A DNA stretch of 63,863 nucleotides, the filler included, from Octopus bimaculoides (lineage: Eukaryota), in assembly GCF_001194135.2 (NCBI RefSeq). It is 8 parts of 8 records of this genome, joined end to end, with 100 filler letters (N's around TTAATTAATTAA, not from the genome) between each part and the next. Parts side by side here need not be neighbours in the genome. Positions count along the whole stretch, not along the records: positions 31,656 to 37,278 come from NW_026346691.1; 7 more parts are not named here. One strand, given 5' to 3'. Below, piece by piece: positions 35,044 to 37,018 of this stretch. The translations under genes and the position numbers were made by a program. Below the pieces are notes generated by a model. That model was not told where the DNA came from, did no database searches, and worked only from the letters and a program-made list of their open reading frames with translations. Position 1 is the stretch's first letter; the number at the start of each line of letters is the position of its first letter.

Positions 35044-36129
35044 CCTACTGGGAAATTTGTATTCATATTTGATGGATAAGTTCCATTAGTGGAAGATTTT
35101 TTTTTCACACTCTGTCTCATAGATCAGACCATGTTGTAACAGATAGGCATCATGAAAGACAATCCCCCAAACTATTTTAGCTTCTAACTTATTGTTGATA
35201 AATATAATCGGTGTGTGTGTCTGCATGTCCAAAGAGTAAAGTAAGAGTAATAGGGACAAGGCATCTAACTGTAAAAAAACTGCCCCAGAATGACCATCCA
35301 ACTCAGGCCAACATTAAGAAAGAGCAGACATAAAATGCGTCAGTGTGTTTGTGTGTGTATACAGGGTGTCCACAAAGTCTGGGTACATTGGGAGACTAAC
35401 ACATACTTTAAGAAATTATCATTTCTTATATTTAATTGTTTATGTTATGATTTTATTTACTCCAGGTACCCAGACCTTGTGGACACCCTGTGTAGACAGA
35501 CAGTTGTGGAGGGAGGGAGGGGGAGACGGATAGGCTGACTGACAGAGAGGTAAGGAGTTAGGTAGGTAGGTAAGTAGGTAGAGAAATAATGCAGTAAATA
35601 GAAAAAAGTATGAGTGGTGAGAATTTACACAACGTTCAACCACCTACCTTGGTTCCTCTCCCATATATCACTCATCAGTGATGAAAGAATAATAGAGATG
35701 AATGAAAGGAGATCAGGGATAAGAGAGATGAGATGGAACCAAGCAGAATGCAATAAATGTAGACTCAAGTATATATATTTGGGATTGGTCAAATTGATGT
35801 AAACACCTCTGATGAGATCCCAATAAGGTTCAAAAATCAATTAAGGCTGTTTGTCATTTTTTTTTTTTTTAAATCTATGAAATAGTTCAATTTACCTTGT
35901 TTATATATTTACTGCATAGGTTACATATATATATATATATATGCTAGCATGGAAAGCGGACGTTAAACGATAGGTGAAGTATATTTGCCACTTAAATGTG
36001 GCTGACCCGTAAGGGTGGATGTTACTGTTGCTTTTAGCCCCAAGAGAACATCTCCTCCAGCTGGCTATTGACACACATCTGTGTCCTGTCTTTATTTGTA
36101 AAGGGAAGTCATCCTTCCCATTTTGATCT

Positions 36130-36188
36130 GCGATACATACGGACTCGAGTTTCTGGGCATTTACCCGTCCTCAGCGTACGACAATCGC
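36130..36188 (-). ncRNA. Type I hammerhead ribozyme motif (HH1, minus copy)
   Basis: gcgat-tgt-cgtacg CTGAGGA c-gggt-aaat-gccc-a GAAA c-tcga-g TC cgtatg-t-atcgc; predicted GUC cleavage between 36142 and 36141. Confidence 0.85.
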
Positions 36189-36323
36189 CGACCTTCGATG
36201 CGAAAGATATCCCGATGCAAATACTTATATCTTTTTCCAGTGAAATTATTCACTGATCTCGAAAAAGTGAAAACAAGCAATGTTAAATCTCTGAACAAGG
36301 TATTAGCAGTAACTGCACGACAA

Positions 36324-36382
36324 GCGATTGTCGTACGCTGAGGACGGGTAAATACCCAGAAATTCGAGTCCGTACGTATCGC
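36324..36382 (+). ncRNA. Type I hammerhead ribozyme motif (HH1, plus copy)
   Basis: gcgat-tgt-cgtacg CTGAGGA c-gggt-aaat-accc-a GAAA t-tcga-g TC cgtacg-t-atcgc; predicted cleavage after C36370. Confidence 0.85.
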
Positions 36383-37018
36383 AGATCAAGATGGGAAGGA
36401 TGACCTCCCTTTGCAAATACAGACAGGACACAGATGTGTGTCAATAGCCAGCTGGAGGCTAAAAGCAACAGTAACATCCACCCTTACTGGTCAGCTGCAT
36501 TTAAGTGGCAAATATACTTCACCTTGTCGTGCAGTTACTGTTATAACCTCGTTCAGAGATTTAACATTGCTTATATATATATATATTTATATATATATTT
36601 ATATTTTTAATTGTGTATAATAGTGTGTGCTAGAGTTTATTAGCGAGAATTTTATTTAAGAACATTATCATTGTTGTTTTTTGGGTGTGCTTCTGTTTAA
36701 CCAGGTTCCTTTAGTTTGAATGTTATAATTAATATCTAAAAAATTTTTCTACCGTATGAATTCTTTATTTATTTTTTTTTATGATTATTGCTCTAATGTT
36801 TTTTTTTAATTCTATAGCATTCTCAATCGATCAGCAGCTGAATTTTATAGTTTACAATATTTATGTTTGAATTAATTTACCATTTGCTAATTCCTTACAC
36901 CTTTGGGATGAACGGTTGTATGTCATCTAATACTTTTTCGTCCTGTTTTGTATATTTTCATGGGTCAACTATGAAAATTGGATTTGAATGTTTTCTGTTT
37001 TTATTGGCTGTATATTAC

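What the first reader, a model, noticed from the sequence alone, without database searches (positions are those of the whole stretch)
35973..36572. Hammerhead-ribozyme repeat unit (retrozyme / Penelope pLTR-like) in inverted-plus-tandem layout
Seen: both strands carry a full type I hammerhead: CUGAGGA core, short stem II (gggu/accc), GAAA, a 2-bp stem III closing the palindrome ACUCGAGU, a GUC site, and a two-part stem I (cgtacg/cgtacg plus gcgat/atcgc). The minus strand from 36323 to 35973 is one 351-nt monomer; at 36324 the orientation flips to a partial copy that restarts the next monomer. (TA)n lies on both sides. Known: minimal type I hammerheads with palindromic loop 3 act as dimers in Penelope-like pLTRs and in metazoan non-LTR retrozymes (roughly 170-400-nt monomers, circular RNAs), and inverted truncated copies typify Penelope integration. 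Inferred: this is a non-autonomous self-cleaving retroelement family, possibly undescribed in this lineage. One weak point: the first stem II pair is C/A in both copies.
Basis: partly seen in the sequence, partly recalled or inferred. Interest (0 to 1): 0.9.

Follow-up and report, generated by a model that had tools for sequence, protein, structure and literature searches.

The report
Hammerhead-ribozyme retroelement, inverted double insertion
A 351-base non-coding mobile element with a self-cleaving hammerhead RNA motif sits in a (TA)n microsatellite as one full copy plus an inverted truncated copy; this is an ordinary new example of the known animal retrozyme / Penelope-dependent elements.

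Summary
Each strand carries a complete type I hammerhead (minus 36188-36130, plus 36324-36382). Both have the CUGAGGA / GAAA / GUC core, a 6-bp helix I with an internal loop and a 5-bp closing stem, a 4-bp helix II, and a 2-bp helix III with a palindromic loop. A descriptor search found 1 comparable motif in 40 Mb of random sequence. A model built from four published retrozyme hammerheads ranks the two copies first (17.6 and 16.5 bits).

The layout is one 351-353-nt unit on the minus strand, joined head-to-head to a 5'-truncated plus-strand copy that runs 50 nt into a next unit. (TA)n flanks both sides, and a 29-nt unmatched tail lies at one end. This matches the published anatomy of Penelope-type insertions. 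My best reading is a short non-autonomous, hammerhead-bearing retroelement mobilised by Penelope-like machinery.

Several limits apply:
- Rfam's hammerhead models do not match.
- A C/A opposition sits at the base of helix II, the most conserved pair of that helix.
- This locus has no two same-strand hammerheads, so it cannot release a monomer.
- A read-through RNA would fold into a ~190-bp hairpin.
- I could retrieve no other family copy, so covariation, copy number and cleavage are untested.

It is a new member of a known kind, of modest interest.

The parts
35925..35942 (.). Left flank, (AT)9 microsatellite: the presumed insertion target
   Evidence: Direct reading. (TA)n is a published preferred target of EN+ Penelope-like elements.
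35943..35971 (-). 29-nt 'tail' between the 3' end of the full unit and the microsatellite. It matches no part of the unit.
   Evidence: The best local alignment to the unit scores only 7 in either orientation. PLE insertions often carry a 30-40-bp extension at one end only.
35972..36324 (-). Full unit (351 nt plus a 2-nt CT overlap), 5'-CTTGTCGTGCAG...ACTTCACCT-3'. It is non-coding and 42.7% G+C.
   Evidence: Repeat arms and alignment. Both ends coincide with the unit-to-unit junction seen in the plus copy. ORFs have no homologues or Pfam domains. The circular fold is -99.0 kcal/mol, z = -3.4 against 200 dinucleotide shuffles.
36130..36188 (-). Hammerhead of the full unit. The predicted cut is 3' of C at 36142 (minus strand).
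   Evidence: Direct reading, descriptor hit, and model R1 at 17.6 bits, E 7e-4, full length.
36318..36334 (.). Head-to-head inversion junction, CGACAA-GCGA-TTGTCG. The 5' end of the full unit abuts the 5'-truncated end of the inverted copy, exactly at the first base of that copy's hammerhead.
   Evidence: Direct reading and repeat arms I1 and I6, which meet at 36324.
36324..36522 (+). Inverted, 5'-truncated copy (hammerhead to unit end), with a 16-nt deletion relative to the full unit.
   Evidence: The 14 substitutions are 10 transitions and 4 transversions.
36324..36382 (+). Hammerhead of the inverted copy. The predicted cut is 3' of C36370.
   Evidence: Direct reading, descriptor hit, and model R1 at 16.5 bits, E 1.5e-3.
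36523..36572 (+). First 50 nt of a next unit, joined in tandem to the truncated copy. This gives the unit-to-unit junction CTTCAC(CT)TGTCG.
   Evidence: Arm pair I6, 92%, and alignment.
36573..36606 (.). Right flank, imperfect (TA)n
   Evidence: Direct reading.

Best explanation
This is a dead-end insertion of a short (351-nt), non-coding, hammerhead-bearing retroelement. It belongs to the animal 'non-LTR retrozyme' / non-autonomous Penelope-like kind, and was placed into a (TA)n microsatellite by the reverse transcriptase and GIY-YIG endonuclease of an autonomous Penelope-like element encoded elsewhere.

Shown here:
- There are two diverged copies, each with a complete type I hammerhead.
- Helix III is only 2 bp within one molecule, but its ACUCGAGU / AUUCGAGU palindrome can pair between two ribozymes.
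- The layout is a full copy, an inverted 5'-truncated copy with a partial tandem, a one-sided tail, and microsatellite flanks.

Inferred:
- In tandem or multimeric transcripts made at other loci, pairs of hammerheads form the dimeric active fold and cut after GUC.
- The released monomers are circularised by a tRNA ligase. They, or the multimers, are then reverse-transcribed at a nicked (TA)n target.
- Priming from both target strands, followed by joining of the two cDNAs, gives the head-to-head arrangement.

At this locus only one hammerhead lies on each strand, and each faces its own antisense. The locus therefore cannot release a monomer. If transcribed, it would mainly make a long hairpin RNA.
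For: - Core and helices are read directly, and the motif is far rarer than chance: 1 hit per 40 Mb with the relaxed descriptor, 0 with the strict one.
- The two copies are the two top hits of a covariance model built only from published coral, mussel and axolotl retrozyme hammerheads.
- Helix lengths (I = 6, II = 4, III = 2, palindromic loop) equal the published 'canonical metazoan type I' description, including the need to act as dimers.
- Helix III adds +0.3 (full unit) to +1.9 (inverted copy) kcal/mol to the monomer fold, so it stabilises neither. The palindrome duplex gives -10.7 and -6.1 kcal/mol.
- A mismatch at the base of helix II together with a 2-bp helix III has a published, cleavage-competent precedent in axolotl HHR_Amex2 in a 353-nt unit. 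That ribozyme cleaves 22% as a monomer and efficiently as a dimer.
- A nucleotide between A9 and G10.1 is a published hallmark of PLE hammerheads.
- Unit size of 351 nt, G+C of 43%, no LTR, PBS or ORF, and a structured circular fold (z = -3.4) all fit retrozyme features.
- The inverted 5'-truncated copy at the 5' end, the partial tandem, the one-sided ~30-nt tail and the (TA)n target match the published PLE insertion anatomy.
- Hammerhead pairs on opposite strands 100-700 bp apart are reported for PLE remnants. Here they are ~140-200 bp apart.
- The 10:4 transition-to-transversion pattern and the 16-nt indel argue that these are two real diverged copies, not a palindromic assembly artefact.
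Against: - Rfam release 15 hammerhead models give no match at E<=10, even on a 73-nt slice.
- The pair next to the core is C/A in both copies. The 10.1-11.1 pair is the most conserved helix pair after 15.1-16.1, and U/U is reported as the best tolerated mispair, which implies C/A is worse.
- The nearest-neighbour MFE of the isolated motif is an alternative fold, 5.6-6.2 kcal/mol more stable than the hammerhead fold.
- There are only two copies. The three differences inside the hammerhead all keep pairing, but they are transitions to wobble pairs, with a chance probability of about 1 in 8, so this is not covariation evidence.
- No other copy was found through any collection.
- There is no PLE ORF in the 4.3 kb available.
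- The locus lacks two same-strand hammerheads (criterion).
- My model R1 rests on four sequences, and its E-values are rough.
Confidence: 0.72

Rival explanations
1. The element is a true hammerhead relic that no longer cleaves. The C/A opposition at the base of helix II inactivated the ribozyme in the ancestor of both copies, and the unit spread (or merely persists) as an ordinary PLE-dependent short repeat in which the hammerhead is a passenger.
For: C/A is present in both copies, and 10.1-11.1 is the most conserved helix pair, with U/U reported as the best tolerated mispair. Rfam gives no hit. PLE clades without hammerheads proliferate well, and the function of the hammerhead in EN+ PLEs is unclear.
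Against: Every one of the invariant core nucleotides is intact in both copies after ~5.6% divergence, and all three substitutions inside the motif keep pairing. A basal mismatch is compatible with cleavage in axolotl HHR_Amex2. PLE hammerheads regularly carry an extra nucleotide 5' of helix II.
Confidence: 0.3
2. The locus is a rearranged fragment of a tandem retrozyme/satellite array, or an assembly artefact. An originally head-to-tail array was inverted by recombination or by mis-assembly, and no Penelope-type integration was involved.
For: The piece comes from a scaffold with a 971-N gap. PLE-like tandem/inverted structures are known to trouble assemblies. One unit-to-unit junction exists.
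Against: The arms differ by 14 substitutions (10 of them transitions) and a 16-nt indel, unlike a palindromic read artefact. The insertion is bounded by (TA)n on both sides and has a one-sided 29-nt tail. There are only 1.7 units in total, not an array.
Confidence: 0.08
3. The two copies are terminal (pLTR) fragments of an autonomous Penelope-like element rather than a separate non-autonomous family.
For: Hammerheads lie in pLTRs, and most genomic PLE hammerheads are remnants of 5'-truncated elements, sometimes paired on opposite strands. Retrozyme consensus sequences are related to pLTRs.
Against: Together the two copies show all three junctions of a closed 351-nt unit (A-B, B-C, C-A), which leaves no room for a 3-kb ORF. 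The helix I/II dimensions are those of retrozyme-type canonical hammerheads, not the PLE minimal form.
Confidence: 0.12
4. The hammerhead-like string is a chance resemblance in a repeat of unrelated nature.
For: No Rfam match, and no homologous copies were retrieved.
Against: The expected number of chance hits in this piece is about 2e-4 with the relaxed descriptor, before counting the extra 5-bp closing stem. The two copies are the top two hits of an independent model. The element context is exactly the one where such ribozymes are known to occur.
Confidence: 0.03

Closest known systems
Metazoan non-LTR retrozymes (Cervera & de la Pena 2020, PMC7229834)
   Same: Both have a type I hammerhead in a 170-400-nt non-coding unit with G+C below 50% and no LTR, PBS or PPT. 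Both show head-to-tail junctions and a highly self-paired predicted circular monomer.
   Different: This locus has 1.0 unit plus an inverted 0.7 unit, not a same-strand tandem. No sequence similarity was found to the published coral, mussel or axolotl units. Expression and circular RNA are untested.
Axolotl HHR_Amex2 / Rtz_353 retrozyme
   Same: Both have a mismatch at the base of helix II, a 2-bp helix III capped by a palindromic tetraloop (ACGU there, UCGA here), and a unit of about 350 nt. The axolotl ribozyme is weak as a monomer and efficient as a dimer (sequence).
   Different: The axolotl mismatch is U/U, the best tolerated mispair, whereas here it is C/A. The axolotl cleavage triplet is GUA, here GUC. 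The unit sequences are unrelated. The axolotl family has ~60,000 copies in long arrays.
Minimal hammerheads in pLTRs of Penelope-like elements (Cervera & de la Pena 2014, PMC4209133) and PLE insertion anatomy (Craig et al. 2021, PMC8557442)
   Same: Shared features are a nucleotide between A9 and G10.1, then a G-C pair; palindromic 15.2-16.2 and loop 3; hammerhead pairs on opposite strands 100-700 bp apart; an inverted 5'-truncated copy; a partial tandem; a one-sided tail; and a (TA)n target.
   Different: PLE minimal hammerheads have a 7-8-bp helix II and a 4-5-bp helix I with an ill-defined loop 1. Here helix II is 4 bp, and helix I is 6 bp plus an internal loop plus a 5-bp closing stem. There is also an extra A 3' of helix II. 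No RT / GIY-YIG ORF is present.
Newt satellite 2 and Schistosoma Sm-alpha hammerhead repeats (established knowledge, cited)
   Same: Both are short dispersed or tandem repeats of ~330 nt with type I hammerheads whose weak helix III makes them act as dimers.
   Different: They come from different lineages and have different sequences. I made no comparison of sequences here.

Membership tests
Hammerhead ribozyme, type I | Invariant core C3-U4-G5-A6-N7-G8-A9 ... G12-A13-A14 ... A15.1-U16.1, with H17 at the cleavage site | tested here: met
   CUGAGGA, GAAA, A-U and GUC are present in both copies.
Hammerhead ribozyme, type I | Three helices around the core, with helix I open (type I topology) | tested here: met
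   Helix I is 6 bp plus a UGU/U internal loop plus 5 bp. Helix II is 4 bp with a 4-nt loop. Helix III is 2 bp with a 4-nt loop.
Hammerhead ribozyme, type I | G10.1-C11.1 pair directly next to the core | tested here: not met
   A C/A opposition lies between the core and the first G-C pair in both copies. It can be read as a basal mismatch or as one extra nucleotide on each side. Only the 5' extra nucleotide has a published precedent.
Hammerhead ribozyme, type I | Match to Rfam hammerhead covariance models | tested here: not met
   No hammerhead hit at E<=10 on 5.6 kb, 301 nt or 73 nt. I could not calibrate this negative against published retrozyme hammerheads.
Hammerhead ribozyme, type I | Match to a model of published retrozyme hammerheads | tested here: met
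   R1 (4 sequences) gives 17.6 and 16.5 bits, E 7e-4 and 1.5e-3, full length. These are the top two hits, and the only non-standard pair is 10.1/11.1. The score is modest and the model is small.
Hammerhead ribozyme, type I | Covariation supporting the helices | tested here: inconclusive
   There are two copies only. All 3 substitutions in the helices keep pairing, but through wobble pairs. Chance probability is about 1/8.
Hammerhead ribozyme, type I | Site-specific self-cleavage | not testable with these tools
   This needs in vitro transcription of monomer and dimer constructs.
Animal non-LTR retrozyme | Non-coding unit of ~150-450 bp with a type I hammerhead, G+C below 50%, and no LTR, PBS or PPT | tested here: met
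   The unit is 351 nt with 42.7% G+C. Its ORFs have no homologues or domains.
Animal non-LTR retrozyme | At least two consecutive same-strand units, each with a complete hammerhead (working criterion for an active copy) | tested here: not met
   There is one hammerhead per strand. The second same-strand unit is only 50 nt long.
Animal non-LTR retrozyme | Multicopy family in the genome | not testable with these tools
   The source genome is not available. No copy was found in the viral, metagenome, prokaryote-genome or protein collections.
Animal non-LTR retrozyme | Linear and circular monomer RNAs in vivo | not testable with these tools
   The only available evidence is a predicted circular fold with z = -3.4.
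Penelope-type (GIY-YIG / PLE RT) insertion | Inverted 5'-truncated copy adjacent to the 5' end, plus a partial tandem | tested here: met
   The head-to-head junction is at 36324. The truncated copy continues 50 nt into a next unit (definition).
Penelope-type (GIY-YIG / PLE RT) insertion | 30-40-bp tail at one end only | tested here: inconclusive
   A 29-nt segment unrelated to the unit lies at the left end only. It is one base short of the published range, and its origin is unknown.
Penelope-type (GIY-YIG / PLE RT) insertion | Microsatellite, often (TA)n, target | tested here: met
   (TA)n lies on both flanks. For the same reason, no target-site duplication can be discerned.
Penelope-type (GIY-YIG / PLE RT) insertion | An autonomous partner encoding RT and GIY-YIG in the same genome, sharing termini | not testable with these tools
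   None is present in the 4.3 kb around the element, and the genome is not available.

The most novel reading that the evidence does not exclude
The unit represents a so far uncatalogued retrozyme family, possibly in a cephalopod. Its hammerhead would have fixed a C/A opposition at the most conserved helix II pair and still cleave, for example through a protonated A+.C wobble or only in the dimeric fold. That would make it a natural core-adjacent variant not covered by the current Rfam models. Head-to-head loci like this one would additionally produce long hairpin RNA that feeds small-RNA silencing of the family.
Probability: 0.12. Interest if true: 0.5.

Novelty: new member of a known kind. 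Interest (0 to 1): 0.3.

Why it matters
If the family is confirmed, it adds one more lineage and one more sequence family to the hammerhead-bearing, circular-RNA-producing retroelements of animals. It also gives a clean single-locus illustration that such short elements are inserted with the full Penelope signature: an inverted truncated copy, a tail and a (TA)n target. That supports the recent proposal that animal retrozymes are non-autonomous Penelope derivatives. The C/A opposition at the base of helix II, missed by Rfam, is a small practical warning that covariance-model annotation under-counts these ribozymes. None of this changes current understanding.

Tried and rejected
1. Rfam search at three scales gave no hammerhead hit. 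The only hits were sub-threshold miRNA/sRNA matches caused by inverted repeats (for example MIR8007 over the whole palindrome), which I reject as artefacts of hairpin shape.

2. I tried to retrieve family copies through spurious ORFs of the unit.
- An alignment of the conserved antisense ORF found no candidates.
- A mixed alignment of ORFs from the remaining reading frames found 111 word-sharing candidates, but none at E<=10.

3. DNA pattern scans gave the following.
- Viral contigs, three scans: nothing.
- Prokaryote genomes, two scans: nothing.
- Metagenomes, one scan: a single hit, L001. It lies inside unrelated sequence with no helix I and no flank similarity, so I treat it as chance.

4. 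I tried to sample the host genome through the neighbouring integrase fragment. The contigs fetched (L002-L005: an ENA assembly and Oratosquilla) share only the integrase coding region at 67-72% and contain no copy of the unit, so they are not the host.

5. I looked for an origin of the 29-nt tail inside the unit and found none.

6. I looked for further copies of the unit in the piece and found none.

7. I considered snap-back (self-primed) synthesis as the source of the inversion. I rejected it because the sequences on the two sides of the junction are not each other's complement; only a 6-nt CGACAA/TTGTCG microhomology is there.

8. I could not decide the linear register of the unit (A-B-C versus B-C-A). 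A-B-C makes the minus copy exactly full length. B-C-A makes the plus copy a simple 5'-truncated copy with an intact 3' end at (TA)n.
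Full report
**What is there**

The piece is eukaryotic, repeat-rich DNA.

On the plus strand, 36324-36382 reads GCGAU-ugu-CGUACG-CUGAGGA-C-GGGU-aaau-ACCC-A-GAAA-U-ucga-G-UC|CGUACG-u-AUCGC. The reverse complement of 36130-36188 is the same string with three transitions.

The parts of the motif are:
- **Core:** all invariant hammerhead nucleotides are present (C3-A9, G12-A14, A15.1-U16.1, C17).
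- **Helix I:** 6 bp, then a UGU/U internal loop, then a 5-bp closing stem.
- **Helix II:** 4 bp with a 4-nt loop.
- **Helix III:** 2 bp closing UCGA, so that A(C/U)UCGAGU is palindromic.
- **Predicted cuts:** after C36370 (plus strand) and after C36142 (minus strand).

**Is it more than chance?**

- A type I descriptor found only these two sites in the piece. In 40 Mb of random sequence with the piece's first-order composition it found one hit, and none when helix I >=6 and helix II >=4 were required. That count does not include the extra 5-bp closing stem.
- Rfam's hammerhead models gave nothing at E<=10, whether I searched 5.6 kb, 301 nt or 73 nt. The groups working on these elements use descriptors (RNAmotif, rnabob) rather than Rfam.
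- I therefore built a covariance model from the four retrozyme hammerheads printed in a published supplement: coral, mussel and two axolotl families. With filters off, the two copies are the two best hits in the piece, at 17.6 and 16.5 bits (E about 7e-4 and 1.5e-3). Both align over the full length, and the only non-standard pair is the one at the base of helix II.
- That score is modest and the model is small. It is still independent of this window.

**The repeat**

- Three inverted arm pairs and a rotated alignment show that the minus strand 36324->35972 is one unit of 351 nt plus a 2-nt overlap.
- The plus strand from 36324 holds the last ~215 nt of the unit, beginning exactly at the first base of the hammerhead. 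It lacks 16 nt and then continues with the first 50 nt of a next unit (36523-36572).
- The copies are 94.4% identical. The 14 substitutions are 10 transitions and 4 transversions. That is what real divergence looks like, not a palindromic assembly artefact.
- Both ends of the minus copy coincide with the unit-to-unit junction in the plus copy.
- Together the two copies display every junction of a closed 351-nt unit, so no long ORF can be hidden in it.
- The unit has 42.7% G+C. Its ORFs have no homologues or domains.
- As a circle it folds to -99.0 kcal/mol, against -80.6 +/- 5.4 for dinucleotide shuffles (z = -3.4).

**Insertion signature**

- The element lies between (AT)9 (35925-35942) and imperfect (TA)n (36573-~36606).
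- A 29-nt segment unrelated to the unit (35943-35971) sits at the left end only.
- The published description of Penelope-like insertions (PMC8557442) lists frequent 5' truncation, partial tandems, an inverted 5'-truncated copy immediately at the 5' end, a 30-40-bp tail at one end, and a bias for microsatellites including (TA)n. All of these are seen here, with the tail one base short of that range.
- PLE-derived hammerheads are also reported as pairs on opposite strands 100-700 bp apart (PMC4209133).
- No RT or GIY-YIG ORF lies in the 4.3 kb available, so the element is non-autonomous.

**How the ribozyme would work**

- The helix dimensions equal the published 'canonical metazoan type I' hammerhead: helix I 6 bp, helix II 4 bp, helix III 1-2 bp with a small palindromic loop. 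That unstable helix III makes single motifs poor cleavers and pairs of motifs active dimers.
- In the energy model the intramolecular helix III adds +0.3 to +1.9 kcal/mol, so it stabilises neither copy. The palindromes pair between molecules at -10.7 (minus copy), -6.1 (plus copy) and -8.4 (hetero) kcal/mol.
- The weak point is real. A C/A opposition separates the core from the first G-C pair of helix II in both copies. The 10.1-11.1 pair is the most conserved helix pair after 15.1-16.1, and U/U is reported as the best tolerated mispair (PMC3088659).
- Two precedents soften this:
  - Axolotl HHR_Amex2 has a U/U there together with a 2-bp helix III and a palindromic tetraloop, in a 353-nt unit. 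It cleaves 22% in an hour as a monomer and efficiently as a dimer.
  - PLE hammerheads conserve an extra nucleotide between A9 and G10.1, followed by G10.1-C11.1. The C here could be that nucleotide. The A on the 3' side has no precedent that I found.
- I put cleavage competence at roughly even odds.

**What this locus can do**

- Each strand has one sense hammerhead facing the antisense of the other, so no transcript can release a monomer. The locus fails the working criterion of at least two consecutive same-strand units.
- A read-through RNA of either strand folds into a ~190-bp hairpin of -402 to -407 kcal/mol that buries the ribozyme.
- I therefore read the locus as a dead-end product of integration, not as a source element.

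**What could not be done**

- I found no other copy. The ORF-based protein searches, three viral scans and two prokaryote-genome scans all returned nothing. The single metagenome hit is a chance match.
- The collections on hand do not appear to hold the host genome.
- Contigs reached through the neighbouring integrase fragment share only that coding region.
- With two copies there is no covariation test. The three helix substitutions all preserve pairing, but only as wobble pairs, which happens about one time in eight by chance.

**Host**

The host is not established. The integrase fragment's nearest named relatives are from a mantis shrimp at 67-70% identity, which says little. From memory only, the repeat at 34779-35045 resembles the abundant octopus SINE. 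If the host is a cephalopod, Rfam-type hammerhead 1 hits have already been counted in the giant squid genome (235 loci, PMC6962438). I found no description of cephalopod retrozymes in the searchable literature.

**Verdict**

This is a new member of a known kind: animal non-LTR retrozymes / non-autonomous Penelope-dependent elements. A 2026 preprint argues that these two are the same thing. Interest is modest.

Noticed in passing
window 31656-31964 (+): An open frame, cut by the piece edge and by the N gap, encodes an integrase core (Pfam rve, E 1e-5). Its nearest proteins are 67-73% identical, and two of them are named from Oratosquilla oratoria. Related contigs show an RT, RNase H and integrase order, so this is an LTR-retrotransposon remnant.
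   Followed up: partly
window 31965-32935: A run of 971 N (scaffold gap) lies inside the piece, so the integrase fragment and the rest of the piece are not contiguously sequenced.
   Followed up: no
window 33588-34171: A large foldback has ~220-nt inverted arms (segments of 67 nt at 100%, 110 nt at 96% and 84 nt at 94% complementarity) around a 139-nt AT-rich spacer. Each arm holds (GTCT)n and a nested 28-nt inverted repeat. It looks like a MITE or foldback element.
   Followed up: no
window 35350-35502: A hairpin with 50-nt arms (80% complementary) gives sub-threshold Rfam hits to unrelated miRNA and Wolbachia sRNA models. These are most likely shape-only matches.
   Followed up: partly
window 35803-35850 (+): A second hammerhead-like string lies 120 nt left of the element: ACACCU-CUGAUGA-GAUCC...GGUUC-AAAA. 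It scores 13 bits (E 0.016) with my model but lacks G12 and a GUH site. It is either a decayed hammerhead of another family or chance.
   Followed up: partly
window 34440-34560 and 34779-35045: Two SINE-like repeats are present. The first is tRNA-like (ARAGORN negative). The second ends in a (CA/TA)n run and, from memory only, resembles the abundant octopus SINE. That would place the window in a cephalopod, but this is untested.
   Followed up: no
window 35972-36572: Transcribed in either direction, the whole locus folds into a ~190-bp near-perfect hairpin (-402 / -407 kcal/mol). This makes it a potential double-stranded RNA source.
   Followed up: partly
window 36318-36334: The inversion junction is itself a small hairpin, CGACAA-GCGA-TTGTCG. 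TTGTCG occurs both at the start of the unit and at the start of the hammerhead, which suggests microhomology-guided joining of two cDNAs.
   Followed up: partly
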